In this document: piece by piece, positions 1,068 to 28,620 of the stretch | Layout of the letters: each line of letters opens with the position of its first letter | Numbering within the stretch: position 1 is the first letter of the stretch | Source of the DNA: Trichoplax adhaerens | Taxonomy: Eukaryota; Animalia; Placozoa | DNA length: 64,000 bases | NCBI RefSeq assembly: GCF_000150275.1 | Contig: NW_002060944.1 | Location: forward strand, 7,888,735-7,952,734 | Reading direction: 5' to 3' | The notes under the pieces: model-generated | Databases searched by the model: none | The model's input: the letters and a program-made list of their open reading frames with translations, nothing else | Told to the model about the DNA's origin: nothing | Position numbers and translations under genes: made by a program

Positions 1068-4000
1068 GTATGAAATCAAACTGTCTTATGAATGTAAGTT
1101 GCCCTTCTGAGTGCGTTTGTGAGACGTCCGTTATCAAATGTACCTTGTTCAGTATGCACTCAGTACCTATTTATATTAGACAAAATGAAGATGGATCAAA
1201 ATTTGAGAAGATGTAAGTGCATTTTAGACTGTTTCCAAGGATACAATAGTACTGTTGATGAGAATTTGAATTAAGCTTTCGATTACTCAAAGATGAATAT
1301 TCTGACAAGATAAAAGTGAATTTAGACTGTTTTCAAAGTTATGTCGGTACTGTTGATCGATATTTGAATTAAGCTTTTGGTTAATCGAAGATTAATAGAT
1401 TCTAAATTCTATAGTTTAGTAATTTCGGTACGTTAACGAGTGTATACTAATAATATTGATGCACAAATTTAGATATCATTAGATATTATTCCCAATTTAA
1501 AATACCAAACAACATTCACGCAGGGTAGTTCCAGCTGATATCATTTTAGATAAATTAAATCTCTCACTAGGATATGTATACTTCACAGTGTAAGTCGCTA
1601 CGTCAAGAATATTCACAAGTGCACCATCAGCGTTGGCCGAGACTATAAAAAGCCGAGCACTAGCTTAGCTGCTCAGTTCCATTTAATCACTTGCAGGATC
1701 ACTTGACTGTTATTGCTAAGAATATTCTTACGTTTTTCTTTAGTACATTTTACGACTAAGATTAACTCAAATAAAGTGAAGTAAATAAACCTATTGCTCA
1801 TTAGTAGCTTATTTGTGTAGCTGAGAGTTAGTTCAACTACGATAGGTCCCTAAGTTAGCTGGGAACACGAGTACTAGTGAAGATAGTGTTTAAGACCCGT
1901 TTTCTAGTTACAAAGGAGATTTGTAACAAATGGGTATGATTTTAATCAATTTTGAAACATTGACTTCAGTAACTTTAAATTTAAAATTGCTTTTCTCCAG
2001 GGTTATTAAAGATACATCAGTGAAAGAGTTAAGGAAAGGAAATTTCGTTGGTTATTCCGGTTTGAAATACTTGTCAGTGCAAATAAAATTAAATCGCCAT
2101 TTTCTTTCACAATTTTATTTATAAATGTAAACCTATCTAATTTTTTATTAAATGCCACGATTCCTTTTCTTATTGATTTTTTCTACATATAATTATGACA
2201 GGGACCTTTATAAAAATGATATTAACTATATCGAAGGTCAAAGTTTTGCGGGAATGAGCGCATTAAAAAAACTGTAAGTCATTCAAGTAATCACCTCATT
2301 CGCCTCTTTGCAATATAACCCTTAATAGCTTATGAAAATGCACCAAATAGATAGTTTTATGAATTTCCTAGTACGCGAATATGTACGTGTGAGATAGAGA
2401 GTAAAATTAGTCAAAATCTAATATGTTCTATATGCTAATGCTCTGATAAAATAGTAATAAGTAATGAATATTAGGAAATAATTCGGTATATAATCTGAAT
2501 TAAAAATTCAATTTAGAGTCTACTGTATCACCAAAAATAGGCAATACGCTCGTGCAAAATTAGTCTCAGTAATAATATAAATATTTTGTTTTGGCTGGGA
2601 AAACAATATCGTGAATTGTATAGTAATACTAATTTAAGTCATCGTAAGGGAAATCTACATTATATTTATTTCTTTAATGTAGAGATATATCCTCCAATTT
2701 TATCACAATGTTATCGCCAGAAATGTTTTACGGGTTGGCAGCTGTTACAGAAATGTTAGTTTTCGATATTGACGTACAGAACTGTTTCAAAATTGTTTTA
2801 ACGTGTCATCATCTGCGCATTATTGATGCATTCTATTGACAGGCTATATCTAAAAAATAAGTTGGATAAGACATTAGACAAGAAAAATATAATAAAGTTG
2901 ATTGTATTTCCGTCAGATAAATTGATTATGCTATAGGATAGATTTACTATTTATGGCTGCAGTCGCTCATTAATAAATCACATTATATAATCAAAGATGA
3001 TTTTTAAGCTTGATGAATGAATGTTTCGTTATATACGAGTATTTGTTTATTCTTGAAGAATAGATTCTTTGTGCTGGTTGGTATTACTATATATATGATT
3101 TGTACTCTAGTCGATTTTTTAAGCTCTTATAGTTATTAATACTTATACCATATATCATACTGATAACGACATCAGTTATAACTGAAGGTATTAAAATTGA
3201 TACGAGAATATACTAGTCAAAAATGCACATTTCGCAAAATCTTATTGATCTAGTAGCAGCCTATGCAGTTCTAAGTTGAACTTTATCAAATATCAGTAGC
3301 CATAAATGAATTATTTTTAATTCATTTCACCTATTTGGATTAGACTTGTGAAAGACAATCAAGTGGAAGCAATTGACGTTAACACCTTCAGAGAATTGAC
3401 CAACTTGAAAGTGCTGTTAAGTATTAACTAGAGTTTATAGGCAATTGCGTGCGTAATAATTAATTTAATTTACATTTAAAACTAGCTTCAAATATGCACT
3501 AGCGTAAGTTGATAAAATGATTCATAAGATCTACCGTTTTCTAATTTAATGAAAATTAAAAATTATCATTTAATTATTTACCTTATTTATTAAAACTATT
3601 ATTTGATTTTATAGGGCATTAGATGGCAATAAAATTGATCGCATCGATCCCATGATTTTTTATTACAACAAAAATTTAACAAATTTGTAAGTTAATAGCG
3701 TAGACTATGCTTAAACAATTAAGAAATACGCCTTGATACATAAAATATATCACTAGTTTAGTATATAATAAGTTTTTAGCAAAGCATATGATATTTAATA
3801 TCCTTTCATAAGTGACCTATAATATGTTATTATCGAACTTACAGTAACTAAAAACATTTTAATGCTATTTCTTCTTTAATTGCGAATACTGCGGATGCAT
3901 ACATATATAATATATGGATAATAAATTCAAATTTTAAGACATTTATTTCTCTTGTTATATGAGACAATAAACGATTGGTCTACTACTGCATTATGTATTA

Positions 4001-6097
4001 CCTATTTGCTAGACAATATTCTTTATTGCGTTTTAAAATTTATTTCTAGAGGCTTGAAATATAACAGAATTCGCCACTTAACACCTGCATTCACCACGCT
4101 GAAAAGACTTAAGATTCTGTAAGAACTAAAATAAAGTTTAATTTCCATTACTGCGTTAAAATACAAATTATTGCATTATTCGTAATAAGCTGCCAAGTCT
4201 CAAATTTACTGCAGTCTGTGGAATAGCTTTCAAAATGAGATTAGTCTTGATAATCAAGAGTCTAAGGTTATTTGATTGGTTCAAACCAGTTTTTTCTAAG
4301 AATAAATTAGAAATAAATCTATTAGTCTACAAAGCTTAGGAGCACTTATTCCCCTAACTTCAATTCTTACGGTGAGATGATTACCTTTACTTTTGTGTTA
4401 AACCTAAAATAGGGTACGAATTTTATTATACTACTTGTCGAACTTCTATTCTCGTCGGTAGTAGTTATATGAAACAGTAGCGGTAGTATTTCCTAAAACC
4501 CTAGAGAAAGATTTACAGTTAAATTTTTAATTAATACAGCGAAGTTGGTGGCTATTAGTTATCGATATCTATGACCAATTCTATATAATCGAATTAAGAC
4601 ATATTGGCAGAATCATTTATGATATACAACCTACCATCCATTAAAATTACTATCACAATAGCTCATAATATAACCAGTTAATGTCAATACGCATGTGAAA
4701 ATACCAGTAACATACTTGCATAATTTTCTATTGTGTAATCGAATTCATTACGATTTTTCTCGTACTGTAAATATTTTATCTTCATTAATATAAGAATATG
4801 AACTTCATAAAATTTAAAAATCTATCCTTCACGTTAGTTAGAGCTGTAACACTTTAATTTGCTATTGCATCACTTATATGCTAAAAGTAAATTCTATCAT
4901 ACTAAACTCTTTTTTAAACAATTAATAGAATAATAGTTCTAATGTTAAAAGAAAATGAGCAAAATTAATACTACTATTTTTTCATCTTGTCTTGAATAGA
5001 CAGTTGTCTAATAACCCTTTGGTTTACCTTCCTCACGCTGCTCTTTTTGGATTAATGAGTTTAGATGTTCTGTAAGTAGCAATTGTACGATCGAAGCTAA
5101 ATTACAGTAGCGACCTTACTGCTATCTGAAACGATACTTAATTAGTGCTATTTATTGATCTCTTAATTAAAGCTAACAACTACAATGGATTAAAAAGTAC
5201 ATTAAAATTAATTATATTATTTCTTTAATGGATCAAGTATAATTCTATCCTATGATTATTAGATATCATTAGTCTTAAATGATAATTATAGTATTATTTG
5301 ATTATATGCAAATTTCCAATATGAAATAAGTAGAAATTTTGTTCACATGTAATTGGTAGTCTATCTTTTATTTTTACAACAGCCTCTTGTAAATTTTCAA
5401 ATTGTAGAAGAACTATTTCTTATTAATTCCTACAAAAATTAATAAACTACAATATAGATATGTTGGAGGCAGAAATTTTAAAGGCTTTCTTCCAGGCAGT
5501 TTGAGTCATCTGCGAGAATTAAAATCAATGTAGGCTAATATTTAAGTTTTAATTTTCGGAAATCATAATATCAGTTACGATAATCGGTTTACAGTAATGG
5601 CTGTCATCATCTTCCGGAAGACGTTTATTTTATATTAATTATTTTGTGTTATTTTAAGATAAAATAAAGAAATTTTATCTAGTTTTTAGTTCGATATTTT
5701 ACTAAAAAGTAAAATTAAAACAGTTATTATTTTGATTAACCTGGTAGATGGGTTGACTTTCACAACTATTCAATATCACAAATAACCAAACAAACGATTT
5801 CTGGTCTACCAGCATTGATCACATTGTAAGTCAATTTTAAGTGAATGAGCTGGTATACTTAATTAATATAACTGCATCATAATTATATAGTTCACATATA
5901 TAATAAGGCGAATAAAGTGTTTTTATATATCATTTTGAATATCCCCTAACGATATTTATTTTTTGGTTTAAATATATTTATTCATATAGCAATCTTTCAA
6001 AATATACTCAAACGGCTTATAACACATTTTTATTCTCATTGTGACCTNNNNNNNNNNNNNNNNNNNNNNNNNNNNNNNNNNNNNNNNNNNNNNNNNN

Positions 6098-6135
<38 letters not shown>

Positions 6136-9100
6136 TATACGATATATAGCAAGTATGATATACTTTACAGAAAATTGAATATCACTGTCATAGCCGAGAT
6201 TACAACACAAAAATAACGGGACTCTTTCCTCTAAAGTGGTCTTAACTATCTAAGCATTAACTCTAAGCACTCTTTAATCTATCAAACCTAGATTCGAGTC
6301 TTAGACGATAGAATACTCACGTTAAGGATCAAAACTTTATTCTAAAAGCCATTTTTTAAAATGACCGATTGAACTCACAACTTACAATCTAGTACTAACA
6401 TTTGGTAACCATCTGTTATCGACTAACTTATCAACTCCCTCAATGAAGAACTTTGAGACTTCCAAATAGCCTCACAAACTTCATTGGTGCAAAACAATAA
6501 TAAATTTATAGCCAAGCCTACAGGCTGAATATCGCAAGAATCATAACACAGATTCTACAATATTCAATCGTAATTAATTAATGGCTTGGTGTTAACATAC
6601 GATTCATTACTCAACAAAATTATATCATTGATGACGCAACAATTAATTAATTTTCACAATTTCATAATGTCTTATATTGATTATATATCTTATTATATTG
6701 ATTTTCAGCAACGTAAGAAATTGCAGAGGTATTTATCGCATTGAAAGTGGTGCATTTCATGGATTAAAAGAGCTAAGAACTGTGTAAGACTTTCCATTGA
6801 TTATATATCAATAATTGCATATTCTTGACAACTACATCAAACAGTAAGAATTGAGTATGATTTAATTCATGGAAATAAAGATAAAATAGGAATAGCTACT
6901 TGTACATAAATGATAAAAATTACCAAATCTCAAATTCTCGAGATAAAATGATCATTTATAAAGCTTTTACAGTTTCCGTATAAATAATAAATTTTCAAAA
7001 GAAACTCCGAGATTTAATATAGCTTCGATTATAGTAAGGCTTTCAATGAGCGTTTTAAAGGAGTATCTAGTAAAATTAGCAATAAGAATTGTTGCTCCTT
7101 ATTTGTGGTAGGTAAGATTTTATGTAACTTACCAGCTATTATTCAGTGCAAATACAGCCGTAGAGATTTAGTACCGTAGTTTACTAGTGTTTATTGTTAT
7201 ATATTATTTATTATTGCTATAAAGTTAGATAATCAATTAGTAGAATTTTAAATTCGACAAGCTCTTAAAATAAGGATTATATTGTTGCTATCTATTTACA
7301 TAACTATTTCTGATATACGTACCAAGTTTAATAGCTTTAATTCAGTTTATTGTTAGTAATTTTACGTTAGAAGTTCTTATAGTGCAATAAAAATCAAGAG
7401 TGGCATATATAATGGTATGCTACCATATTTTAAATATAAAAGATAAGTAGATAATATTTTGGTAGATTATCCATTAATATTAAAACATTTATTCCAGCAA
7501 TAGTAAGGACATGACAAGCATCAAAGTTTTCGATATATTAATTTCAGTCGATTCTATGTTTGCTTTCAGAATTATGGTTTATACAAGTTTGAATAAGCTT
7601 CTTAATGGGACATTCAGTAATCTACCTAAGTTAAAAGATTTGTACGTTTCAAATTAACGGCGACTGCGTAATGAATATCTAAAATTTACTTAAAAGGAAA
7701 AGAGCTAATTTTTTACCTTAACATTCTGAAGTATAAAGTTGCTCATAAGTCAAAATTTTCTTGTAGTACAGCTGTTAAATTTATTATTCGCAACATTAAA
7801 TTATCTTATATTACGCCTATTACATTATCAAAAAAGATTTTATTTGTAAGTTTAATCTTACAGCTAGATGTTCACAGTCTTATCATTAGCAATTTGCAAA
7901 TATTATAATTCAGATAAACAATAATTGAAAATCATTAAGCTAGCCTAAGAAATTAGTCAGAGGAGGGTTTCTTGCAGATTTTTAGTAATGGTACAAGTAA
8001 TACAACTTATTTTGATTTTCTGTAGGGTTTGAAATAGACGAGATAATTATTACACATAAATATAATTTTAGGGAGTCGATATAAGTTTGCGTTCTATTAA
8101 CAAATATAATAATATTTTCATAGAAATCTGCATATGAATAATATTGAAAAAGTCGAAGAAGGAGTATTTGCTGGTTCTAATAACATCAAGACGATGTAGG
8201 AATTATATTTATATTTTAATATTTATAAATATAACTTAATTTTAAATCTAGACTGCTTTTCATATTTTGATCTAAGATCTTAAAATTTTTAAATATCTCA
8301 TATGATTAAAAGCTATTTAAATAGCAACAGCATTCGCGTTATTCCAAAATTACTCTTCGAAAATCTATCTATATTACGGGAGATGTAAGCTTAACACATT
8401 TCTATTGATTACTAATCTTAAAATATTATTTACTGTGATAATTTCATAGCCAATCCACGGATATTTTTAATTTATATCAATAGAGATCTATCTAATAATC
8501 GAATTGAAAGAATTGCAGATAGAGCTTTTAGTGATTTACATAGCTTAACAAAGCTGTAGGTCAAGTATTAATGACTGTAATGAATTTACTTCAATATATT
8601 TATGTAACCTTAATCATTCTGTAGTAGTACAGAAATCTAATAAGAGGTTCATGCGCTCATGCTAATTACTGTCCATAAGAGAATGGGTCTAATGGAGATG
8701 ATTAGCGAGTTTTAAAATGTGCAAGCTGGATTAAATTCTTTTTCCATTTTCATTAAGGTACCTGCAAAGAAATATGATTGGAGAAATCACATCGGAAATG
8801 TTTCAAGGCCTATCAAGTCTTCAATTACTGTAAACTCTATGTTTAATCTATAAAATAGTTGTTGATTATAGTTTGTTTATTTTTACTTACTTGCAAGTGA
8901 ATTGTTATATTTTATTGTCTTGTGCTATTACTAAATATTCTGTAAATCCTTCATTACATAATATTGTAATCAAAATAATTTTATAAGTACAGAGGAAGAA
9001 CTTTGATCATTATGGAGTTCAATTTCTTACACTAATGTTATTTGACGAAAATTTATATCTTCTCCAGTAAACTATCATCGAATCAGATAACTAAATTAAG

Positions 9101-12100
9101 CAGCTACGGCTTATCCACGTTAGTCTCGGTTGTATCTCTGTAAGTTTTATTATGATACATTAACATAGTCAAGCTAAGGTGAAGCTTGGAATTTTCCTAT
9201 GATAAAGCTTATACTTGGTTAACCTATTAGAGAGCTTTCAAGTAATGTTATCCAAAATATTGAGAGTGATACATTTGCTGGGCTTATCAAACTTAAAAAT
9301 TTGTGAGTATTAGCTATAAATGGGATTACATGCATTACTGTATATATTATAATTCTATTATTACTGAGTAAGATTAAATCAGGTAACATTTCATAGGCAC
9401 AGTGTGCTAATGATATTAGTGATCAAATTGTTTTAGTTCATATTTCAGAATGCTTTAATTATCCATAATCATTGCCTACTTAGGGTATTATCGAGTAACA
9501 ATATCCATCGGGTGAAGAAACATGCTTTCTCTAATCTACCCGAACTGGAATCATTGTATGTAGAATATTGGTAACAAATAAATAGAGTATCAGCTAATGC
9601 ATCATACCATAAAGTTTTATAAATTGACTATAATTAATTTAGGAATCTGGATCACAATCTTATCCATTTAATAGAAGCGTGTGCTTTTAATAGATTGAAG
9701 AAATTAAGAATATTGTAAGTATTGTACAAACTTATAGAATTGTACAATTGTACAAGCCTTCACGCGATATTCTACATTAATTTGGATGACGAGCCGAAAA
9801 TAGATACAATAATTACTTGACACTATTGCAGGCAACTGAACGGAAATAATTTACCATTTATCAATGATGGAATGTTTCATCGATTACACAATTTGCAAGC
9901 TTTGTAAGAATATTTTCCATCAATATTCTTGATCAATACTGCGTTTGTACTTTTAAGTAAAGCTTAGATTCAATTTCCTTCTCTATAAAAGATTAAATGA
10001 TAAGTAATCGTACGATACTTAAACTTACTTTCTTAGGGAATTATCCAGCAATCAAATTGACCATCTGGAAATTAGTGATATGCAATCGCTACCCAGCTTA
10101 ACTGCATTGTAATTGATGATAAAATAATTAATTAATAAATATGCTTCAGTATTTGTGGCTTATAAAATTTACTTTGAAATAAAACAGCCAAAACTAAAAG
10201 TTGCCATAGTACCATATTCGTAAAAATATTTTATAATTTGTATTAACGAATACGTACATTGATGATATACAGAAATTTAGCAAATAATTTACTCAGTAAT
10301 ATTTCTTCCGCGAGCATGAAAGGATTATCTCATTTGAAAACTTTGTAAGTTATTCAGAATTATTTGAAAGTATTTATTTTCATGAAATAAGGGGATAAAC
10401 AAATATACGATATTAAGCAGTAATTTTACATACTATTTTCGTAGATGGCTTGATGAAAACAGATTTTCTTCTCTAAAATTTGCCGATGAAATTAAGCTGC
10501 TGAATCTTACCCATCTGTAAGTGCGAAAATCAGTACGTACTTAGAAACGTTAAGAACTCTAGTATATATGTTATATATTTGAGTGGATAAAGGAATATAA
10601 ATTATAATTTTTGATTCGCTGTTTTGTAAGAAGATTAAAATCATCACCATTTTGTTTACAGATATCTAAGAAATAATCAGATTTTGTTGTCAAAACACAT
10701 ACTCCTAAAAGGCTTACCTCAATTGGAGACATTGTAAGTTGTTTAAAAGATGATGGATATATAACTGATAAAAAATAATTGCAATATATTTTCAAGTGTA
10801 AATATCTATAATTGCATAATGCGTACTAAATGAATCTTAGTGTCTTACTTATTTGATGTTAATAGATAATAAATAAGTATAATTCAAATATTATCTACAA
10901 TATACCGGGTGCAGTTTATATTTATCATCTTTAATAGTATAGAGGGTAAAAATTAAGATTAAATGCTTATAAAAATGTTATGTCCCTTAGAGCTCTGGAT
11001 GGAAATTTTATTACACACTACGAAAATCTCTTATTGGGTGAAAATGCTAATGTCAGCTATTTGTAAGATTATAAATCATTCTTTATCTTCTTCAATTGAT
11101 GACATATTATTACTAGTAAATCTGTTTCAATAGCTGTGACTGCCATTTTCAATATCAATTTTGAAATGCACATTGCCTTAGTTCATATTATTAGAGTATA
11201 CAGCTACTGCTATTAGCTAGAATCGCTACACTGCAATAGTTTATTTAATTTGTTTTAGATTTATTAATAAATAATATTGTTATATGTACGCGTATCATCG
11301 AAAATTTGAAAAAACCTATTTTTGATCCAATTTGTAATCATTGTGTCTATAGGGGCTTCTCTAGAAATAAAATTAAAACAATTTGGCACCGGCCAAATGA
11401 AAAAATTAATTGTACATACCTGTAAGCTATTATAAAATCCTATAGTTGGCTTATAATAGATAATAATAAATAATAGCAAAATCACTTAAAAATGTACGTC
11501 AAATTTAAACCATGTTTTACAATCTCTACGGATATATTAGTGATTAAATTGGCAATCTTACACTCAATATTTCAATGTCTTACACTAATTTATTTCCATT
11601 CTAGAGATTTATCTCATAATATGTTAGAGGTTATACCCTATTTTGAAACAAAGGATTATGTTCAAGTTTTGTAAGTGGTTAGAATTGTAAAGGGTATTTT
11701 ATAGGCATTATATTTGAATATGATTTTACCTTAAATGAAATTGATTTATGCTTGCTTATATCTTATTTATTTTTAAACATTTAAATTATGGACTAGAAAT
11801 TTGTCCTATAATGCCATTTATGATCTAAGTGCGACTGATTCATCTAAATCAATAACTTTTGAAGCGATGTAAGTTTGGAAAATGTTAAAACTATTTACCA
11901 ATTAATTATCGCTGTACATTGTAATAAATTCAATTTTTATTTTATTTGCATCTCAGCGATCTAAGCGGAAACTTAATAAAAAGTATCCCTCTTAAATTCT
12001 TTTCACGAATGCCATTTCATGAGAGCTTGAAAGAAATGTATTTGATTAATTAAATAATATTTTTTTAACAGTTTGCAATAATTACCGTCATCTTATTGAT

Positions 12101-15100
12101 TGTTTTTGTATTATTAATCATTATCTCAATTTGCTAATACTTTACGCATTTTAATTTTAGATATTTATCCAGAAATCGTTTAAGCAATCTCGAAGAAACT
12201 TGTTTTATTTCATTATTGCAACTGGAAAAACTGTAAGGATGAAAGTTTAAATTTTAGTAGCTTTTAAATCCATCGAAATGTATCTTACAAGATATTTATT
12301 CGGGATATTTTCATGGCCTACCGCATAAAGATTTATGCGGTATATTGAGTTTATAACTGATAGTACCAAAATGGTAAAAAAACTTAAACTTAAATTATAT
12401 TTATGGTCGTTTATACGGCTAGTCAAAAAATATATAAAATTTTAAAGTATTGACTTCAAGTTCAAATTTAATTGAAAAACGAAATTATTTCCATATTATC
12501 TGGCCAAATCAAAAATGATTGTAGCTATAATCTTCATATATCATTAATATATAACTATTTTACGTCGATATTTCGTTTTTAGAGACCTAAGCACGAACTA
12601 CCTGTCAGAAATGAACTTTTTAAGGCATCTACGCGAGCTGAGATATTTGTACGGTTACGCAATGATTGTAGCTAAGTACAACAGACATTTGTTACAGCTT
12701 GATATAATGTTTATATACCTCAAACTATTTACTAGTATTATAAGTAATTCTATCGAAAAATTAGTACTTAAGCAAAGTTTACCTGTGTGATGGAGGGTTC
12801 AATATCTCAGAGGATTGAGATTTAGTCGCCATTTACAATTATTACAACAAAGGGTTCATAAAAGTTATGCTTTATTGTAGGTTAGTAATGTGAAGTACAG
12901 TGAGGTAGTTACGGTAGATCAGCGTGCAAGCTGTCGTGAGTAACGAGTAGAAGTATTAGACTGTGAGAGACTAACTAGAAGACTAACTGAGAGGCTAATG
13001 ATCTCTGAGGTAGAAATCGCCGGTATTTATAGTTTTAAAGATAGAGCACATGCAGAGGATAGGATTGTGGAATTAGATACAACATATACCATAACAGGTT
13101 ACAAAATAGCAGATGATTGTAGAAAACAGCGAGTACCTTAATAACTAAATACAGTAGTCTATATATGAATGTAGAGTAAGCGGACTGTAGATCTGTCTAA
13201 ATATAAGAGCAATACAACATGTCTATATTTAAGAGTAGAATATAGTTACAGTATATTCTAAATACACTCAACCTGATATTCTATAACAATGTAATATATA
13301 TTATATACCCCAAATTATTTGCTATTATTATACCATGATATCAAAAAATTAGTATCTAAGCACAGATACTTGATAATTCTGCAACATTATAATATACATA
13401 CTCTAGACTATTTACTATTATTATCAAAAATTATATCAAAAAACTAACAATTTAGCTACTTGATATTTCTACAACAATTTACTTTCTGTCTGTAGGAGTT
13501 TGGATAATAATTTTATTGCCAAAGTTAATAAGGATTGTATTAGAAATCTTACTTCATTGACAGAGCTGTAAGTATATGTGCGAGTATACGACATGTTAAG
13601 CACGAAAGTCTGATAGAATGTTAAAGGGAAGAGGGTGGAGATTTACTTTAAAATCTTCTTCGCACTGGATTCGATTTGCGCATTTGCTTTCTATTTTATC
13701 ATCTGATTTAAATTTATATTTTAATACTAAGAATAAAGAGTATTTTCTAACTGAGAATTCTCTAACATGCAGACTCCGGTCTAAAACTGAAATAATTCTC
13801 TCCTACAGTTATATAGGCATGTTACCAATAATACTAATGCAATCCTTTTTTAATATTAACAGAAGATTAAGGCGAAATCTAATACGGCGATTAAAAACGG
13901 GCACTTTTAACTTTAACAATTCTATCCAATGTCTGTAAGCATATTATGTCATATATTAAAATCCAATGCTGTATCTTCAGTTCTATGCATGAGCAGCATC
14001 TAGAAGAATAAAATTTTTAATCATTTAATGTCAATTTTTAGCACTGGCTATCAATAAAATTGTTATTATTGTGACCGGTTTTATTTCTGTAGAGGGCACA
14101 TGGGTGAACAAAAAGTATAATTCGATATGATTAAGGTAGTAAACGATTCTTGGTCTATATGTTTTTAGGGATTTCTCTTGGAATATGATTAAGTACATTG
14201 AAGAAGAAGCATTAATAGGCCTTGACAAACTCCAAATACTGTAAGATTAAAAATGATGAAAGCATTGATAAAAAATGTACAGTAGTAACAGTAATAATAA
14301 ATTTGGTTAAGGATTTGATACCTTACATATATTATGTAATTTTCGTTAAGGTAGTGGGTTAAATGGATAGTACGGTTAAGTTTTACTCCATAGCAATAAG
14401 ATACAATATCCTATCATTAGATGTGGGATATTATAATTTAAAAAATTTAACCCTATTTTCCATAGGCGACTTGATCATAACCGGATTATAACTCCTACTA
14501 ATCTTCTTACCAGATCTTTACAAAAATTGGAAATATTGTTAGTAAATTATTAATGTTTTTGTTATCCCAGAATCGATAAAATTAACATAATTTTGTTTAT
14601 AGGTACCTACGCGATAATCAAATAGAACATTTGCGAGAAGATGTCTTCAGCAATTTGATCTCAATTAAGGAAATGTAAGCGTTACTTGGATGAAACATCT
14701 CATTAATGTCTTTCTGGTTTGTAACTAAATAAAATTCTAATAAAACAACTTCCTTATTAGTTATCTTGACGGCAATAAAATGGACAGTTTGATCGATGTA
14801 ACTTTCACCCGATTAGCTCGTTTAACGATTTTGTAAGTATAACAGATGGTGGTGAGCAGAAGCTGATCAGAGTAATTATAGATCGAAGAAACGATATATC
14901 TGTATTTTTAAAGTTGCTAGGCTAGCTAATATAAATAGCTATTAATCTATGGGATTGAATTTACATTTAATGGCGTATCAATGTAAATATCTTTGATTTA
15001 TAAAGCAATATCTTTTATTATATTTTTAATTAAGCTCTGCAAGCAGGAATAAAATTAAAGAATTCGTTTGCCATCGATTCTACAGTGGCATCAGGGGAAG

Positions 15101-18100
15101 AGTGATTAAGCAATTGTAATTTAACATTTTTCTGCTGGAAATAACCTTGGCTTTTCTTTTCGGCAATATGATGTAGATTATGATAATATCCATTTCTCTT
15201 TTAGGTTCTTACAGCATAATAATATTTCCTTTATTTCCAAACGATGCTTCACATTTTTGGCTTTAATTTCTGAAATTTTGTAAGCTATAAGTTTAGCTAA
15301 TTCATTAATTGTTCATCTGACATAAGCTATTTGAAGTCAAGAAGTTATGGATTGTCAAAGAAATAAATTTTAAATAGTATAACTTGAAAACCTCATATTT
15401 GAATAGGGACATCGGATTTAATGATTTTGCTAATAATATTCCGGATTTGATGGATAAACTACTCCATACAGATTTAAGAGTTACGAGGCTGTAAGTAAAT
15501 AAGAAGGTACACATTGCTGCAAATGATAGTGAAATAGCTATTAGCCTTGGATTGCATAATTGCAGCTTAATATAAGCAATCTTAAATCTCTAGTTAATTC
15601 TCGGTCTAAATAGGTTAAGTAAAATTATAATCTTATGACCGTACACTGATATAATTAAGAATCGACGCAAATACTTTTGAAGCTCCTGCTCTAATGAATA
15701 CTTGGGAAAAAATGATGATACTATACTAAGTATAGGTTGTTTAAATGCAGAATGTTATAATTTGTACGCGCATGTAACGAGTTTAATGATGAATGATTAC
15801 TTTTGATAATATATCTTAATTTTAAAATATATCAATATTATTTTATTAATAGAGGAATTAGTGGAAATGGTCTTAAAACGTTATGGAATAGCTTTAATAT
15901 AGGTCTGGTAAGGAAAGAAATTGGATTGTAAGTTAATCATAAAGAATTTATTCCTCTCATCAACTGTAGCACTTATTTTCGGTAAAATAAGCTTTCTCAA
16001 TGACTTTACTTATTCTGTATTGATATACAGAGATATCAGTTACAACAATTTACCAGCGATTGAAATTCTCAAGATCATCAACCACATCCATCCTCCATAT
16101 ATCTGTGATCACTACAAGCGGGCTGATCGACTTCATCATAATATTTTCGTCAAAAGCTGTTGGTTGATGTACTTGTTAGTAGGCTTAGTTGTGCATTTAA
16201 TATATAGATTATACAGAGCGTATATATCAAGCCGCTAAACTATATTTAATCTATCGTCAGTTCTACTATAAAAAAATTCTAGATTGATTAAGTTACATAA
16301 TTTTAACTTCTGCAGAGGTTTAAGCGGTTTACAACTAAAGCGCTTACCGTCTCCAAATTTACGACACCTGGAAGGTTATATAGCGGTTCTGTAAGTATAA
16401 CATTGTTCATTAAGTTAATAGGAATAACTTTGCTTATGCTTAGAGTATACTATGCAGATATTAAGGAGAGGAGTAGCTAGCTGATTTTAATCTGCAATAG
16501 AAAAGAATCTTAGTTATTGATTCAGCAAAAATCGAATTTGTTTATCAGTACTAATCAAATTTTAAATCTGAGAATAATTAAATTAAGCAAAGCATGGAAA
16601 ATTCGTATCACAAATTTGATCGGATAATTGTTATGCTTACCGAGAGTTTATGACTACATAAATTCAAAATTGATCGGTAAACGTGAGTAAAAAGGTTGTA
16701 GCTGGGTATTGCTATGAAGTAGTCATAATGATTTGTGATATAATCAGAAATGAACATTTCGAGTTAAAAGGAACAACGATACCAATAATATTTATTTATA
16801 TCATCTGAAGAATTATAAACGAATGTACTGTATATAGAGAAAAAGATCCAAGTTGCGGCGCAAATGGGTTAAAAACTGTAGCGTTTAACTCAGATCTATA
16901 TTTCGATAGAGGGGAAGGATCTTTACGAATAGTCCATACCTTCTTACCTCGTATCAATTCCATTCTGACAGATGGTTAGCGACTTAATAGATATGAAGTC
17001 ATAGTTGGAGCTCCTAAAATCTTTGAGCCTGAGTCTAGTTAAAATTCTAAATGAGCTAAGTTGAGAATGATGTGAATTAGCAGCTAGGGTACCTGTACCA
17101 CGATAGAACTTTGTGCACTTTTCCTAGTGTATTCAATGGAGGACAATATTGAATGAGATCATGAATATTTGACTATTTACCATAATTGTACCTGGAATTA
17201 CATGAATTGCGTACAGAGAAAAATATTTACATAAGAAGGCTCATTTAAATTTCCGTCCAGTTTCAACTTGGTAAATTTATCAAAATATTTTTCGTTTGCT
17301 TGATAGATGACCAAGAATTCCATGTGACATGCCATTAATAATTAATTAAAGATTCGAAATTTTTTTATTTTATTTGATATTATACAATTTAAAACAGAAG
17401 TATAAAGTTCCAACATTCACGTCTCTAAATTACTTATTGCTTAAGTTCGATTTTTAATTTACCTCGCATATAGTACTCTGAACAATAATTTTATCAAAGA
17501 ATTTGACGTTGAAGATTTCTTTTCTGGAAGCGATAGTAATCTCCTAGAATTGTAAGTCATAGAAAATGCTTATAAGGTTAAATGATTAGGACTGGGAAGT
17601 AATCTTCATTTGAGTATAGTAGAAGAATACAATGATTTTTCATCTATATCGATTTATCAGGCTTTATCTCATATATACTATGTTACTATTTGTGCCACTA
17701 TAAACATTCAGGCAGCTTGCTGGAAATAAACTTAAAAAGTTTACCAACCGGAAAAATTTTCGTTTTCTAAGCTTACTGTTATTGTAAGTAGCTATCACGC
17801 CTTATCGAAATAAAATGTTATTCTAATATATAAGAGTAGAACTCAAATTATTGATTTCCATATTTGCTATAATAATAGCCATCGATCTTAAAATTAAAAA
17901 TAACAGTTATAATATGATATATCTTAGTATTGATATGATGCTAAGGTTTAGAAGTATAAGAGATTTGTAGAAAATATTGAAGCAGGAATTTATCTTAGCT
18001 TTTGATAATTGTCTTATGACAGGAGCTCAAGACAAACTGACTGTAGGCTATGTTGCCTAAGTCTATAAGGATTTTGTATTAATAGCAAAGTCAATTTAAT

Positions 18101-20484
18101 TTTATTACTAGTTCTTAAAATTTAATTTTCCTGTTGATCGATTGGTTAATAGAATGTAGTTATAAACGAAGAACGTATAAAATTTGTTCGCATTGCTTAG
18201 CATCCTCTGAGAAGATTAAATTTATTCTTATTATCTGTACAACAACCTTATTAGTAGATGATTTAATCAAAATAAATTGTTTGTTTACCTAGAAATATAT
18301 CCGATAATAGCATTACTAACTTCTGCGATAATGCTTGGCAAAAATTTGCGCCAAAACTACGGAATGTGTAAGTATCAAAATCTGACGGAGTAAAGTAATT
18401 CTATATACATGATAATAGATTGGAAAGCAATTGTTTTTAAGTCGTGTCCATAAAATTTCGATCGCCACTTATTGATAAATTTTAAGGGAAAGTTTTCTGC
18501 TAAAAGTAGTAATCAGTATCTGATTTTAGATGCACACGAATATATATATTTATCTGTTACGGGCAATGTATGAAATTATGAAATTTAACATGTATATCTT
18601 TTATGGAAATGCTGCTAATTTTGTATGTAGATATGCGGATAGATCCAATATCAAGAAACTGTCTTCACGATGTTTGCAAAGATTGTCCAATCTTCGATTC
18701 CTGTATGCTACATTATCTGTTTAAAATACTTTCCCATATTATATGATTGATAGTTTATGCCGTGTAAATTGATATTTGTTTATGTGTAGATCATTAAAGG
18801 CGAATCCACTACTAACAATATCTGAAAAATCGCTATATGGACCTCAACAACTATCTACTGTGTAAGACTATTTGAAAGAAAGGGTTAAAAATGTATCAGT
18901 CATTTAATAGATTTATTCCGTCATCGTCCTAATAGTAGTCTTACCGACATTTTTTAAGTATTTTGTAACCATAATAGATTATGTTTCGTTACGTTATATT
19001 AAAAGGAAATTGAATATGTATTAAAGTGATTTATAATCTTACAACTGATAGCTTAGGATTACTTAGATATTCCGCTATTTTGTTACGATTAGATCTAAAG
19101 CAATGCAGCAATATACTATACTTCCGGTGCTAAAAAATGAGCTTCTTGAATTACAATATCATACCGTATTTGTCTATCACATGCAATTAAGTTAAAAAGT
19201 ACGATAGTTAATCATCTACTCCATGTTTGTTTTTTGGTTACAATTATTAATGCGTAAGAAGAACTCAGTAATTTTATCTTTCTATGTGGCAGTTTTACAT
19301 CTCGAGATTATTTCTGTTGCTTGGTACCTGCAAAAGTTACTGCATGCGAGCCGATTATCGTAGAATCACTGACTTCGTGTCAAAATCTGCTATCTCATTT
19401 ATCCTTAAGACTCTACATATGGATAATAGGTGGATTAGCGTTTATAGGAAATTTGTTGGTTTTACGTTTACATTGGATAAAACGGCACAGCAGTAGATCA
19501 AAAGGAACATCACAGCTTCTAATTATCAACCTAGCGGTATCGGACTTTCTAATGTCAATTTATTTACTAATAATTGCTATTAGTGATCAGATTCATGTGA
19601 ATAATTATGGCGTCCGTGCTGAAAGTTGGCTAAGAAGTCCAATTTGTGCATTAGCATTTTTCTTGGGCAGCTTATCTAGCATCATGTCTGTTATCTCGAT
19701 ATTACTAATTAGTGTTGATTTATATTTTCGCTGTACAAACCCGTTTAATTATCAGAATAGAAATTGCAGATCAGAAAAATTCAAAGTTACTGTTATTATA
19801 TTATGGTTAATTTGTATTATCTTTGTTGCAATACCAGCTGTAACTAGCACAAATGCCGCAGGTAATGATCGAATTTATAAATATAGTAGCATTTGTATGC
19901 CAAGTAATGTAGAAGATGCATTTTATCGAAGTTGGATCACAATTGCTACAGTCTGTATGGTTTGTATTTGGTTAACGACATGCATATTGTATGCACTAGT
20001 ACTTTTGAAAGTTCACCAAAGTAGCCAATCTGTTCATAAGTCGGCCCAATTAGATCGAAAATTAGCAAGGAAATTGTTTTTAATTTTATTTACGGACTTA
20101 ATATCATGGCTGCCTTATTATATACTTATTTTTAAAGTGATTTTGACCGGTAGGATCGATATTTTTACGTTAAAATTTGTTATTATACTCACATTACCTA
20201 TGAATTCAGCTCTCAATCCGTACCTTTATAGTTTTACTTGTCCTACATCACCAGGTAGAGCTTTATTGTCTATCCGTAAGAGCTTTTCAGGGAGATTGCG
20301 GGATTATTACTCGGATCCATTGCGCCAAGTTAATCATTATTTCTTCAAGTGTAATGATAATAATGATCCTCAAAATAATTTAGAAGGACCTGATGTTAAT
20401 ATCACACTAAATAATACAGAGTGTTTACAAACTGTTGATAGAGAAGAAGTTGTTAAGCGGACTCTTCGAGAATCAAATGTGTAA
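1068..20484 (+). CDS. Giant LRR-containing rhodopsin-class GPCR (LGR; RXFP/GRL101-like hinge and 7TM), ~50 exons, roughly 1600 aa
   Basis: LRRNT exon 1068-1212 (CPSECVCETSVIKC). Then 48 AG/GT-bounded exons, mostly 72 bp, each encoding xLxxNxIxxLxxxxFxxLxxLxxL (e.g. 2001-2072, 2202-2273, 2683-2754, 8484-8555, 9231-9302, 14603-14674, 18790-18861). Terminal exon 19293-20484: FTSRDYFCC..CEP..SCQNLL hinge, GNLLV, LAVSDFLM, FTDLISWLP, NSALNPYLY. The first exon/signal peptide is unresolved (in-phase candidate 906-987 is not hydrophobic). Confidence 0.9.
1222..1397. repeat. Diverged tandem duplication, ~99 bp period
   Basis: TTTAGACTGTTT..GTACTGTTGAT..ATTTGAATTAAGCTTT occurs at 1222 and 1321. Confidence 0.7.
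1589..1928 (+). mobile_element. Solo-LTR-like repeat in LGR intron 1
   Basis: TGTAAG start, GTGCAC ~30 bp in, TATAAAAAGCCGAGC (cf. TATAAAAGACCGAGC near 21027), AATAAA, and end GAGATTTGTAACA (cf. GAGATTTGTGACA at 21272). Confidence 0.55.
6048..6135. repeat. Assembly gap (6048-6097) followed by (AT)n microsatellite
   Basis: 50 N followed by an ATATAT run. Confidence 0.95.
6186..6548 (-). mobile_element. Solo-LTR-like element in LGR intron
   Basis: TGTCAT...ATAACA termini, reverse AATAAA near 6336, reverse CTATAAAT near 6505, G-poor + strand. No target-site duplication seen. Confidence 0.4.
12786..13096 (-). mobile_element. Solo-LTR-like element in LGR intron
   Basis: TGTGATGG...CCATAACA imperfect inverted termini, reverse AATAAA near 12871, reverse CTATAAATACC near 13022-13032. 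May extend to 13288. Confidence 0.4.
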
Positions 20485-21272: not shown

Positions 21273-21368
21273 ATTCCTTAACGTACATATTACAAATTAT
21301 TTTTCTTATTGTGGTTGATAAAGCGAGAATACAGATGATAGACGCCCTATCGAACATATTATAAAGTA

Positions 21369-22740
21369 CTAGTACAAACTCCCGTCGCTTTGCTGACGGT
21401 TTACGATAATGTGCTCATTTAACAGATAGTATTACCATTTGATAGACGTGTCAGATAATCAAAGTCATTTAACAGTAGTATAAATACCCCCACGCTGCTC
21501 ATTTCAAGGGTGGGTGAGCGGCATTTTGATCGTAGTTGATAATGTGCTTTTTTAGTGTACTGTCAGGTTATAATGAGCGGATATAGCATACTGGAACTGG
21601 TGAAATACTGCGCAATGATATGTGTGTACAAATTAGGAAATTATTGAAGTTGTATTACTCCACGATCATGTTCATCTTTGGTCAATTCATTAATCGTATT
21701 GTAAAAGTGGAGTAATACTACATTCATTTACGCTACCTAAGTTGTATCGCACGAAAATATCCCTTGATCGCCTCAGTCGGTCATTGAAATTTATATGAGT
21801 ATACGTGCAATATTGTTGTTATTGCATCCAATTACGAAGAGATCTGTAAAGTATGGGATACGATTATAACTACGATACGTCTATACAGAAAGCATAAAAT
21901 ACAGTCTGTTTCTTCCGTCAATGCTTTATCAATTTTTAGTTTACGATACGCATAATTCACTTTACTGCACAATTGACTGATTTTACGTTAGTTATACTTT
22001 GGTGTCTTTTGTTGAACCAATTTAAAGGAGACATTACTCCATGAGCCATTTTTCTCTTGTTATCTTTAGTCCATTCATTAATGGAGTTCAGTATGGTAAT
22101 AAAGTATTTCACTTTTACGCTATCGAAGTTGTGTCTGACAAAATATCGCCTCAGTCGGCCATCTCTACTTGTATACGTGTAATGTAATGTTGTTTGGTCT
22201 TCAAGAAAGCGATTCATATTTTATGTTGGTCATTGACTTTATTGATGATATATCACGACACGAGACACTGAGGGCAAAAATTGCCTTTTTACATACCGTT
22301 GGGAAAAGATATCAAGTCTATACGCGTACTACTAGTACGTCGATATAGAAAGTATACAGTAAAACATGTTTCTTCCATCAATGCTTTATCCAGAATGTTT
22401 TATCCATTTTAGTTTCCATACCGTTGGGGAAAGATATCAAATCTATACGCGTACTACTAGTACGTCGATATAGAAAGTATACAGTAAAACATATTTCTTC
22501 CGTCAATGCTATATCCAGAATGTTTTATCCATTTTAGTTTCCATACTGTTCGGAAAAGATATCAAGTCTATACGCGCACTACTAGTACGTCGACATAGAA
22601 AGCATACAGTAAAACATGTTTCTTCCGTCAATGCTTTATCCAAAATGTTGTATCAATTTTAGTTTAATGCACCCTTAATTCACTTTCACTGCACCGATTT
22701 ACGCTAGTTCTATTTTGTTGAAATAATTGATTTATTGAAC
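21369..22740 (-). mobile_element. Non-autonomous Helitron-like element (5' end unresolved)
   Basis: Minus strand ends CCGTCAGC-AAA-GCGACGG (hairpin) GAGTTTGTA-CTAG|T, the canonical Helitron 3' terminus. The interior is made of nested duplications and a minisatellite. Confidence 0.6.
22292..22665. repeat. Minisatellite, 125 bp x3
   Basis: Units start at 22292, 22417 and 22542 (CATACCGTTGGGAAAAGATATCAAGTCTATACGCG...). A diverged partial copy lies near 21885-21990. Confidence 0.92.
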
Positions 22741-28516: not shown

Positions 28517-28620
28517 CCAGCAGTCTCTACATTTATGGCTTTTGCTTGAATTGATGAAAGAAAAAGTGTTGACAGTTTACAAATCAATCAGTTTACAAAT
28601 CGAATTTTTCGATCAGTAGT

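What the first reader, a model, noticed from the sequence alone, without database searches (positions are those of the whole stretch)
1068..20484. Giant GPCR with ~48 one-repeat-per-exon LRR cassettes: possible combinatorial recognition receptor
Seen: 48 LRR exons, each a multiple of 3 nt (66-84 bp, one 144 bp) and all phase 2-2, so any subset can be skipped, duplicated or shuffled in frame. All read open. Known: phase-2 single-LRR exons are ancestral in LGRs, but vertebrate LGRs have only about 9-17 LRRs (RXFP1/2 have 10 plus an LDLa module). This receptor has an RXFP-type hinge, ~3x more LRRs than LGR4-6, and no visible LDLa. Inference: a ~1200-aa solenoid is far larger than hormone binding needs and may be a pattern-recognition or chemosensory receptor diversified by exon skipping or exon shuffling. 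The ORF track misses the ectodomain almost entirely.
Basis: partly seen in the sequence, partly recalled or inferred. Interest (0 to 1): 0.8.

Follow-up and report, generated by a model that had tools for sequence, protein, structure and literature searches.

The report
Giant 49-repeat LRR receptor gene, Trichoplax
This is a real, expressed Trichoplax adhaerens gene for a very large hormone-receptor-like GPCR whose roughly 49 leucine-rich repeats each sit in their own exon; it belongs to an already published placozoan receptor expansion, and I found no sign that it is diversified by exon skipping.

Summary
Window 1068-20484 (+) carries an LRRNT exon, 48 single-repeat exons (66-84 nt, one of 144 nt, all phase 2-2, all open) and one last exon with the hinge and 7TM.

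Two corrections:
- The assembly gap at 6048-6097 hides a 49th cassette of 78 nt. It is present in the Trichoplax sp. H2 ortholog, and two RNA runs show "78 letters between" the flanking exons.
- The signal-peptide exon lies 1.48 kb upstream of the window.

The product is about 1,681 aa. The public models of this gene are incomplete: TRIADDRAFT_53796 has 952 aa, and H2 RDD37287.1 has 1,270 aa and is marked partial.

RNA contigs from two studies splice E5 to E20 in constitutive order. They bridge the point where the H2 annotation splits the locus into two genes.

All six paralogs examined have 42-54 such cassettes. In the two tandem neighbours the cassette order is collinear with this gene. No two cassettes within the gene exceed 60% DNA identity. 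Diversity therefore comes from gene duplication plus substitution, not from shuffling or skipping.

The family is published: 41 placozoan-specific LGRs with "unusually high" LRR numbers (PMC9545775). The scan also noted a sister gene on another piece of this genome (s1-733975).

New details: the true repeat count, and loss of the DRY arginine (D-L-Y) in this three-gene subclade. Interest is moderate.

The parts
1068..1212 (+). E2: LRRNT cap (C-x5-C-x3-C-x-C-x6-C), phase-1 acceptor, phase-2 donor. E1, the signal-peptide exon, is outside the window at L001:8255-8318 (1,480 nt upstream of base 1).
   Evidence: RNA contig length fits E1-E5
2001..2072 (+). E3, LRR cassette, 72 nt, phase 2-2
2202..2273 (+). 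E4, LRR cassette, 72 nt
2683..2754 (+). E5, LRR cassette, 72 nt
   Evidence: its end is the loose end before 3344 in RNA contigs
3344..3415 (+). E6, LRR cassette, 72 nt
   Evidence: RNA joint 3415>3615
3615..3686 (+). E7, LRR cassette, 72 nt
   Evidence: RNA joints
4050..4118 (+). E8, LRR cassette, 69 nt
   Evidence: RNA joints
5000..5071 (+). E9, LRR cassette, 72 nt
   Evidence: RNA joints
5458..5529 (+). E10, irregular LRR cassette, 72 nt
   Evidence: RNA joints
5748..5825 (+). E11, irregular LRR cassette, 78 nt
   Evidence: RNA joints
6048..6097 (+). Assembly gap hiding a further 78-nt phase 2-2 cassette (H2: L004:7827-7904). The real missing stretch is about 184 bp.
   Evidence: RNA joint 5825>6709 with 78 letters between, in X6 and X7
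6186..6660 (.). Dispersed repeat of about 470 bp inside the intron (not part of the coding gene)
   Evidence: at least 40 copies at 82-88% identity in the genome; depth spike in all runs
6709..6783 (+). E12, irregular LRR cassette, 75 nt
   Evidence: RNA joints
7570..7641 (+). E13, LRR cassette, 72 nt
   Evidence: RNA joints
8124..8195 (+). E14, LRR cassette, 72 nt; first residues of the H2 model P0014
8313..8384 (+). E15, LRR cassette, 72 nt
8484..8555 (+). E16, LRR cassette, 72 nt
8758..8829 (+). E17, LRR cassette, 72 nt
9068..9139 (+). E18, LRR cassette, 72 nt
9231..9302 (+). E19, LRR cassette, 72 nt
9484..9555 (+). E20, LRR cassette, 72 nt
   Evidence: its start is the loose end behind 9303 in three runs
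9643..12232 (+). E21-E32, twelve cassettes: 9643-9714, 9832-9903, 10037-10108, 10273-10344, 10445-10516, 10662-10733, 10991-11062, 11353-11421 (69 nt), 11605-11670 (66 nt), 11797-11868, 11957-12037 (81 nt), 12161-12232
   Evidence: (all in the H2 protein)
12583..12648 (+). E33, 66-nt cassette with a weak donor (GTACGG); left out of both public gene models
   Evidence: open in H1 and H2 with splice sites kept; 66-nt counterparts at the same position in both tandem paralogs; no RNA evidence obtained
13496..14832 (+). E34-E39, six 72-nt cassettes: 13496-13567, 13863-13934, 14169-14240, 14466-14537, 14603-14674, 14761-14832
15035..15115 (+). E40, 81-nt cassette with a Cys; left out of both public gene models
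   Evidence: clear 81-nt counterparts with the same Cys in both tandem paralogs; identical in H2; no RNA evidence obtained
15205..15927 (+). E41-E43: 15205-15279 (75 nt), 15407-15490 (84 nt), 15853-15927 (75 nt)
16031..16174 (+). E44, 144 nt: one LRR plus a 24-residue two-Cys insertion, predicted as a low-confidence helical excursion; the solenoid continues after it
   Evidence: (a 144-nt counterpart was detected in neighbour A only, not in B)
16316..18861 (+). E45-E50, membrane-proximal cassettes: 16316-16390 (75 nt), 17474-17551 (78 nt), 17712-17783, 18293-18367 (75 nt), 18631-18702, 18790-18861. This is the part best conserved among paralogs (58-87% identity).
19293..20484 (+). E51, last exon (phase-2 acceptor): end of hinge, 7TM, C-tail, stop TAA at 20482-20484
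   Evidence: 45-94% of its sampled 31-mer words are held by runs X1-X10 (X1 behaved as DNA)
19294..19401 (+). Hinge: ...RDYFCC-x8-C-x-P-x10-C-xxLLSH; four Cys conserved in the family (two invariant, two in 90% or more of the sequences)
19447..20229 (+). Rhodopsin-type 7TM domain (Pfam 7tm_1); NPxxY kept (NPYLY)
   Evidence: E 1.2e-25
19717..19725 (+). TM3 motif D-L-Y (GAT TTA TAT) where 13 more distant family members have D-R-(F/Y/L)

Best explanation
This is one expressed protein-coding gene of Trichoplax adhaerens (locus of TRIADDRAFT_53796). It encodes an LGR-type, rhodopsin-family GPCR of about 1,681 residues.

The parts, in order, are: a signal peptide (exon outside the window); an LRRNT cap; about 49-50 leucine-rich repeats, each in its own symmetric phase-2 exon; a short four-cysteine hinge; and a 7TM domain in a single last exon.

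The gene belongs to the placozoan-specific LGR expansion. That expansion has about 50 loci in this genome, many in tandem. This gene is the third of a three-gene tandem array. The one-repeat-per-exon, phase-2 layout is the ancestral LGR gene structure, lengthened here.

Shown: the exon chain, splicing of E5-E20, the hidden exon, the family architecture, and the LGR-like predicted fold.

Inferred: the long, largely continuous LRR solenoid is about twice the length of a TLR8 ectodomain. It binds an extracellular, probably protein, ligand. The conserved membrane-proximal cassettes and hinge relay binding to the 7TM domain. Receptor diversity arises from whole-gene duplication followed by substitutions in the N-terminal and middle cassettes, not from alternative cassette use. 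In this subclade the DRY arginine is replaced (D-L-Y), so signalling may not go through canonical G-protein activation.
For: Gene model.
- The joined model is open from ATG to stop.
- The Trichoplax sp. H2 ortholog protein matches E14-E51 at about 99% identity, apart from two skipped cassettes.
- All exons are open and all splice sites are kept in H2. pN/pS between the two strains is 0.25. Exons differ less than introns, 0.47% against 0.80%, p = 0.01.

Expression.
- RNA contigs of X6 and X7 (two studies) cover no intron. They give GT..AG joints exactly at the E6-E19 borders, with loose ends matching E5 and E20. They include the 78-nt hidden exon.

Domains and fold.
- Pfam 7tm_1 scores 1.2e-25.
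- The best solved relatives are RXFP1, TSHR, LHCGR and FSHR.
- The AF2 model of the C-terminal half (pLDDT 76) matches full-length LGR4, TSHR, LHCGR and FSHR.
- The AF2 model of 660 ectodomain residues has pLDDT 86.6 and pTM 0.82, with one strand per roughly 24 residues. It matches whole TLR8/7/9/3 ectodomains.

Family.
- The hinge+7TM exon gives 92 matches in the own genome, about 50 of them near full length.
- Six of six paralogs examined have 42-54 phase 2-2 cassettes.
- Cassette order is collinear with the neighbours.

Literature.
- PMC9545775 reports 46 T. adhaerens LGRs. Of these, 41 are placozoan-specific, with their own hinge and unusually many LRRs.
Against: - No read or contig evidence was obtained for junctions E22 to E51. 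That part rests on the H2 gene model, open frames and paralog conservation.
- Inclusion of E33 and E40 in mRNA is not shown. Both public models skip them.
- Contigs cannot exclude rare isoforms.
- The ligand, G-protein coupling and cell type are unknown.
- Loss of Arg3.50 could mean a non-signalling or decaying receptor.
Confidence: 0.8

Rival explanations
1. One reading: a combinatorial recognition receptor. Because every cassette is phase 2-2, subsets are skipped, duplicated or shuffled to make many receptor isoforms from one gene.
For: All 49 cassettes are symmetric and in frame, so any skip is frame-neutral. Gene predictors do skip cassettes freely (P0013 lacks about 20 of them, P0014 lacks 2). 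One X7 contig joins 8384 to 8758 with 72 unplaced letters where E16 would be.
Against: - Only constitutive joints are seen across 16 consecutive junctions in two RNA studies. The odd X7 contig replaces E16 with 72 letters and does not skip it.
- Cassette order and the odd cassette lengths are conserved in paralogs that differ by about 40% in the 7TM.
- Cassettes are old and individually distinct: at most 60% DNA identity, median 39%.
- Symmetric phase-2 LRR exons are the ordinary LGR gene layout (my own knowledge of the LHR, FSHR and TSHR genes).
Confidence: 0.06
2. Same gene structure, but the function is pattern recognition or chemosensation. The giant LRR-GPCR family would stand in for the Toll-like receptors that placozoans lack, sensing microbial or food-derived molecules.
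For: - The family is large, tandemly expanded and lineage-specific.
- N-terminal and middle cassettes diverge fast, while membrane-proximal cassettes are conserved.
- The ectodomain models like the TLR7/8/9 horseshoes.
- Placozoans lack canonical TLRs and already couple other recognition domains (CTLD) to GPCRs (PMC6321704).
Against: - Structural likeness among LRR solenoids is generic.
- H1-H2 pN/pS of 0.2 in the ectodomain shows constraint, not an arms race, although power is low.
- The closest sequence relatives are hormone receptors.
- No expression or ligand data exist.
Confidence: 0.25
3. Two separate genes, as in the Trichoplax sp. H2 annotation: a small secreted LRR protein (about E2-E9, 191 aa) and a shorter LRR-GPCR that starts near E14.
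For: The H2 annotation calls two genes at the orthologous place, and the larger one is flagged partial.
Against: X6 contig 15 (1,017 nt) runs from about the start codon to E12. X7 contig 18 runs from E9 to E15. X6 contig 16 runs from E15 to about E22. Overlapping spliced contigs therefore bridge the annotated split. No LRRCT, stop or new signal peptide occurs between E9 and E14.
Confidence: 0.03
4. A decaying or non-signalling receptor: loss of the DRY arginine marks a pseudogene-in-waiting or a decoy.
For: This gene has D-L-Y, and the two tandem neighbours have D-L-R and D-L-H, where the rest of the family keeps D-R-x. There is also a 2-residue ICL2 insertion. A 7TM relic lies between neighbour A and this gene.
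Against: - The change is shared by three genes that have since diverged by about 40% and all stay open. It is therefore old and tolerated.
- All 51 exons are open in two strains, splice sites are kept, and pN/pS is 0.25.
- The gene is transcribed and correctly spliced.
- NPxxY and the hinge cysteines are kept.
Confidence: 0.08

Closest known systems
Placozoan-specific LGRs of Trichoplax adhaerens (Tadh-LGR6-46; example Tadh-LGR15 with 34 LRRs), Koch and Grimmelikhuijzen 2022, PMC9545775
   Same: Same species. Rhodopsin 7TM with its own cysteine-rich hinge, an unusually long LRR ectodomain, no LDLa, and a large tandem expansion.
   Different: This gene has about 49 cassettes, and six examined paralogs have 42-54, well above the 34 drawn in the paper. 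The paper's TriadITZ identifiers could not be mapped to this locus. The D-L-Y change is not described there.
RXFP1/RXFP2 (type C LGRs, relaxin-family peptide receptors)
   Same: Best solved sequence relative of the hinge+7TM exon (7tmw, 1.2e-28). The short hinge aligns through C...C-x-P...(S)..NLL. GenBank names the H2 ortholog 'GRL101-like'.
   Different: There is no LDLa module, which RXFP1 needs for activation (own knowledge). About 49 LRRs against 10. The 7TM is in one exon. D-L-Y stands in place of the E/D-R-Y type motif.
Glycoprotein-hormone receptors and LGR4-6 (type A and B LGRs)
   Same: Overall LRR-hinge-7TM fold (Foldseek top hits LGR4, TSHR, LHCGR, FSHR). One LRR per phase-2 exon and the 7TM in the last exon (own knowledge of these gene structures).
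   Different: They have 9-18 LRRs and different, longer hinges. Sequence similarity is lower than to RXFP1 (LGR4 3e-10).
TLR7/8/9 ectodomains
   Same: A 660-residue stretch of the ectodomain superposes on the whole 26-LRR horseshoe (TM 0.56-0.64).
   Different: There is no TIR domain and no single-pass membrane anchor. The array here is about twice as long. The likeness is the generic LRR solenoid.
Insect chaoptin and artichoke (30-40 LRR surface proteins)
   Same: They are the best sequence hits of the ectodomain outside Placozoa, apart from unnamed ENA/NCBI contig proteins and the Amphiura LRR-GPCR (25-29% identity over half to two thirds of the query). Repeat number is comparable.
   Different: They are GPI-anchored or secreted adhesion proteins without a 7TM.
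Other long LRR-GPCRs, e.g. Amphiura filiformis P0159 (1,451 aa, about 39 LRR motifs)
   Same: LRR array plus 7tm_1 in one protein of more than 1,400 aa. Many-LRR GPCRs are therefore not unique to Placozoa.
   Different: Only 26% identical. Exon structure is unknown. It has fewer repeats.
Dscam1 and lamprey VLR (combinatorial receptor diversification)
   Same: Only the formal possibility that modular cassettes could be mixed.
   Different: No alternative cassette clusters, no near-identical cassette copies, no flanking donor cassettes, and no alternative joints in RNA.

Membership tests
LGR (leucine-rich repeat-containing GPCR, rhodopsin family) | Rhodopsin-type 7TM domain | tested here: met
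   Pfam 7tm_1 E 1.2e-25 over the full profile; seven long helices in the AF2 model
LGR (leucine-rich repeat-containing GPCR, rhodopsin family) | N-terminal ectodomain of LRRs between an LRRNT cap and a cysteine-rich hinge | tested here: met
   E2 cap, 49 cassettes, four-Cys hinge
LGR (leucine-rich repeat-containing GPCR, rhodopsin family) | LRR array and 7TM on one transcript/polypeptide | tested here: inconclusive
   RNA contigs chain about E1 to about E22. E14-E51 is linked only by the H2 gene model and by frame. No read evidence for E22-E51.
LGR (leucine-rich repeat-containing GPCR, rhodopsin family) | Fold like solved full-length LGRs | tested here: met
   Foldseek E 6e-19 to 1e-16 to LGR4, TSHR, LHCGR and FSHR over 500-790 columns
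Type C LGR (RXFP1/2, GRL101) | One or more N-terminal LDLa modules | tested here: not met
   The signal-peptide exon splices straight to the LRRNT. No other coding exon was found in the 1.5 kb between them or upstream.
Type C LGR (RXFP1/2, GRL101) | About 10 LRRs | tested here: not met
   49 cassettes
Type C LGR (RXFP1/2, GRL101) | Type C hinge and 7TM closest to RXFP | tested here: inconclusive
   RXFP1 is the best PDB sequence match and the hinge aligns. The published tree places the placozoan-specific clade outside types A, B and C. I built no tree of my own.
Placozoan-specific LGR expansion (PMC9545775) | Trichoplax gene, own hinge consensus, unusually many LRRs, tandem paralogs | tested here: met
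   Organism from protein names and contig length; family hinge consensus; paralogs
Placozoan-specific LGR expansion (PMC9545775) | Being one of the 41 listed genes | not testable with these tools
   Supplementary Table 2 lists only TriadITZ identifiers
Combinatorially spliced receptor (Dscam-like) | Alternative or skipped cassettes in transcripts | tested here: not met
   Only constitutive joints at 16 junctions in two RNA studies. Contigs cannot exclude rare isoforms.
Combinatorially spliced receptor (Dscam-like) | Arrays of closely similar, interchangeable cassettes | tested here: not met
   Maximum 60% and median 39% DNA identity among the 72-nt cassettes. Position-specific conservation across paralogs.

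The most novel reading that the evidence does not exclude
In an animal without Toll-like receptors, the roughly 50 giant LRR-GPCRs (each with 42-54 LRRs) would form a germline-encoded recognition repertoire for microbial, food or non-self molecules. Its subclades would be rewired away from canonical G-protein coupling (DRY changed to DLY/DLR/DLH). This would be a GPCR-based counterpart of TLR-type immunity or chemosensation. Rare cassette-skipped isoforms would add variety.
Probability: 0.2. Interest if true: 0.7.

Novelty: new member of a known kind. Interest (0 to 1): 0.35.

Why it matters
Placozoans have no neurons and no canonical TLRs, yet they keep about 50 very large LRR-GPCRs. What these receptors bind is an open question in early-animal signalling.

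This case shows that public gene models badly under-count the repeats. This gene is modelled at 952 aa and at 1,270 aa (partial), against about 1,681 aa in reality. The published maximum for the family is 34 LRRs, against 42-54 in the paralogs examined here. Domain surveys and trees of the family rest on truncated ectodomains.

The report supplies a corrected, partly transcript-backed exon map, including an exon lost in an assembly gap. It also flags a subclade that has lost the DRY arginine, which bears on the choice of assays for deorphanisation.

It removes the more exciting idea of splicing-based diversification, at the resolution of assembled RNA contigs.

Tried and rejected
- Word search with the last exon. 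It found only 218-693 aa proteins, none of them the gene's own. Full HMMER over the representatives was needed to find P0013 and P0014.
- Word search with P0014 for a transcript-derived full-length protein. None was found; the hits were only paralogs and generic LRR proteins.
- Word search with P0014:380-680 for transcript fragments spanning E32-E41, to test E33 and E40. Nothing was found at 1e-40, so their inclusion in mRNA stays untested.
- The idea that E44 (144 nt, two Cys) is an LRRCT-like cap splitting the ectodomain into two domains. AF2 shows a low-confidence helical excursion, with the strand ladder continuing. I rejected it as a confident domain break.
- Mapping this gene to the published Tadh-LGR list. 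Not possible, because the list gives TriadITZ identifiers only.
- Rfam on 1-21000. No matches.
- dN/dS on concave-face positions among paralogs. Not attempted, because synonymous sites are saturated at 40-60% protein divergence. I give only descriptive per-position identities.
- The joined spliced protein was built only inside local scripts, from window.fa and L001, for frame checks and local comparison. It has no reference, so it was not sent to any search or fold tool. Searches used the last exon by reference and the stored proteins P0013/P0014 or parts of them.

Full report
**What the sequence is**

The window is AT-rich eukaryotic DNA, with 27-31% GC across the gene. It lies at G000:C1413:7888735-7952734 of a 105.6-Mb assembly with 1,414 contigs.

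The last exon is 100% identical to XP_002109605.1 / TRIADDRAFT_53796 of Trichoplax adhaerens. That protein is recorded on a contig of 9,739,543 bp, which is the length of C1413. The last exon is also 99% identical to RDD37287.1, "G-protein coupled receptor GRL101-like protein, partial", of Trichoplax sp. H2. The organism is therefore T. adhaerens (Placozoa).

**Checking the observation**

I chained every AG|exon|GT candidate that is a multiple of 3 and open in phase 2-2, then joined the chain in a script.

- Between 2001 and 18861 there are 48 consecutive cassettes: 72 nt x33, 75 x5, 66 x2, 69 x2, 78 x2, 81 x2, 84 x1 and 144 x1.
- The codon split by each intron is L/I/V/F/M at all 49 junctions.
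- 41 of 48 cassettes open with L-x-L-x-x-N-x-(L/I).
- With E2 (1068-1212, an LRRNT cysteine cap) and the last exon (19293-20484), the CDS is open to a single terminal stop.
- A position-weight scan finds 45 such exons in this 19-kb gene. It finds one in the other 43 kb of the + strand and one on the whole - strand. Chance is excluded.

**The assembly gap (tested first, as asked)**

The gap at 6048-6097 falls in an intron of the model, so the frame does not depend on it. It is nevertheless not empty.

- The orthologous H2 locus (L004, NOWV01000255.1) is 99.1-99.4% identical to the window.
- H2 has 184 bp where the window has 50 N. These hold a further 78-nt phase 2-2 LRR exon with good splice sites, L004:7827-7904.
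- RNA contigs of two runs join 5825 to 6709 with exactly "78 letters between".
- The gene therefore has 49 cassettes and encodes about 1,681 residues. The 1,655-aa joined model lacks this exon.

**The 5' end**

E2 has no signal peptide and starts with a phase-1 acceptor. A signal-peptide exon with a phase-1 donor lies 1,480 nt upstream of window base 1, at L001:8255-8318.

An X6 contig has 427 nt upstream of E6, against 425 nt expected for E1-E5. This fits the assignment but does not prove it.

There is no LDLa exon. No LRR cassette lies upstream of E1.

**One gene, constitutively spliced where it could be tested**

Run X1 behaves as DNA, because it covers the introns. X6 and X7 come from different studies. 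They cover exons only and give GT..AG joints exactly at the predicted borders of E6 through E19. Their loose ends match the end of E5 and the start of E20.

- X6 contig 15 (1,017 nt) spans about E1-E12.
- X7 contig 18 spans E9-E15.
- X6 contig 16 spans E15 to about E22.

Together they bridge the place where the H2 annotation splits the array into a 191-aa LRR gene and a partial GPCR.

No skipping joint was reported. One X7 contig has 72 unplaced letters in place of E16, which is a replacement rather than a skip. I could not resolve it.

Contigs drop rare variants, so rare isoforms are not excluded.

Junctions E22-E51 have no read evidence. They rest on the following:

- The H2 protein matches E14-E51 at about 99% identity but omits E33 and E40.
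- All exons are open and all splice sites are kept in H2.
- The paralogs conserve the same cassettes.

E33 (66 nt) and E40 (81 nt, with a Cys) have same-length counterparts at the same positions in both tandem neighbours. I therefore count them as real exons that the predictors missed.

The JGI model P0013 (952 aa) skips about 20 cassettes and starts inside an intron.

**Constraint**

H1 and H2 differ at 23 exonic sites and 115 intronic sites (0.47% against 0.80%, p = 0.01). There are 12 synonymous and 11 non-synonymous changes, giving pN/pS of 0.25 overall and 0.20 in the ectodomain. Power is low, but this is not a decaying gene.

**The protein**

- Pfam 7tm_1 matches at 1.2e-25.
- Among solved structures the hinge+7TM exon is closest to RXFP1 (1.2e-28, with the alignment running through the hinge cysteines). 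Next come TSHR, LHCGR and FSHR (1e-24 to 1e-18). LGR4 is far behind at 3e-10.
- An AF2 model of the H2 C-terminal half (pLDDT 76) superposes on full-length LGR4, TSHR, LHCGR and FSHR.
- An AF2 model of 660 ectodomain residues (pLDDT 86.6, pTM 0.82) is a regular solenoid with one strand per roughly 24 residues. It matches entire TLR8/7/9/3 ectodomains. The full array is therefore about twice a TLR8 horseshoe.
- The 144-nt exon E44 adds a low-confidence helical excursion. It is not a clear domain break.
- The ectodomain has 14 N-glycosylation sequons.

**The family**

The hinge+7TM exon has 92 matches in the genome. About 50 are near full length, and many are in tandem. Two lie 24 and 30 kb upstream of this gene, at 61-62% identity.

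All six paralogs I fetched carry 42-54 detectable phase 2-2 cassettes.

Against the two neighbours:

- The cassette series is collinear: 29-31 reciprocal best pairs, 23/28 and 27/30 of them in order.
- Membrane-proximal cassettes E45-E50 are 58-87% identical to their counterparts. Most others are 22-65% identical.
- Within the gene no two cassettes exceed 60% DNA identity.

The array is therefore old and position-specific. It was copied en bloc by gene duplication. There is no sign of shuffling or homogenisation.

**An unexpected detail**

Thirteen more distant family members keep D-R-(F/Y/L) at the end of TM3. This gene has D-L-Y, and its two neighbours' H2 orthologs have D-L-R and D-L-H. All three also have a 2-residue ICL2 insertion. 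NPxxY and the four hinge cysteines are kept. Canonical G-protein coupling may be altered in this three-gene subclade. That is an inference.

**Comparison with what is known**

Koch and Grimmelikhuijzen (PMC9545775) report 46 T. adhaerens LGRs. Of these, 41 are placozoan-specific, with their own hinge and "an unusually high number" of LRRs; Tadh-LGR15 is drawn with 34. This gene fits that clade. Whether it is one of the 41 cannot be told, because the list gives TriadITZ identifiers only.

One LRR per phase-2 exon is the classical LGR gene layout (my own knowledge of the LHR, FSHR and TSHR genes).

Long LRR-GPCRs also exist elsewhere, for example Amphiura filiformis at 1,451 aa.

Placozoans lack canonical TLRs (PMC6321704). 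This keeps a recognition role open but untested.

**Verdict**

The "giant LGR" reading is right. The splicing or shuffling diversification reading is not supported.

The kind of receptor is already published. What is new is the true size, the corrected exon map with an exon hidden in the gap, the family-wide 42-54 cassette architecture, and the DRY loss.

The scan's first stage noted a sister gene elsewhere in this genome (s1-733975).

The joined spliced protein was used only inside local scripts and was never sent to a search or fold tool.

Noticed in passing
window 19717-19725: The TM3 DRY motif reads D-L-Y. The H2 orthologs of the two tandem neighbours read D-L-R and D-L-H, while 13 more distant family members keep D-R-x. 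The three genes also share a 2-residue ICL2 insertion.
   Followed up: partly
window 6186-6660 (intron after the gap exon): A dispersed repeat of about 470 bp, with at least 40 copies at 82-88% identity across the genome. It is strongly over-covered in both DNA and RNA runs. It is probably a non-autonomous transposable element.
   Followed up: partly
L001:1957-2638 (C1413:7880956-7881637, upstream of this gene): A truncated relic of a hinge+7TM exon: TM3-TM7 only, 53-56% identical, with a frame break and one TAA. It lies between neighbour A and this gene.
   Followed up: no
window about 23285-31600: Two tandem mitochondrial-carrier (Mito_carr) genes lie downstream, according to the H2 annotation of the orthologous locus (L004:25005-28843 and 29700 onward). 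They match the first-stage note on SLC25A39/40 duplicates.
   Followed up: no
window 22288-22665: A 125-bp-offset tandem duplication signal appeared in the H1/H2 comparison (253-bp blocks at 93% identity), in a region with 'YSTV'-like repeated ORF text. There is also a roughly 155-bp indel between H1 and H2 at 21368-21523.
   Followed up: no
L001:8255 (start codon) and RNA contigs of X6 and X7: Contigs from two different studies both begin about 2 nt upstream of the ATG. This means either a very short 5' UTR or a graph break at a shared leader. It is unexplained.
   Followed up: no
G000:C1384:407201-436188: A paralog with about 53-54 detectable cassettes in 29 kb. It is possibly the longest LRR array in the family.
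   Followed up: partly
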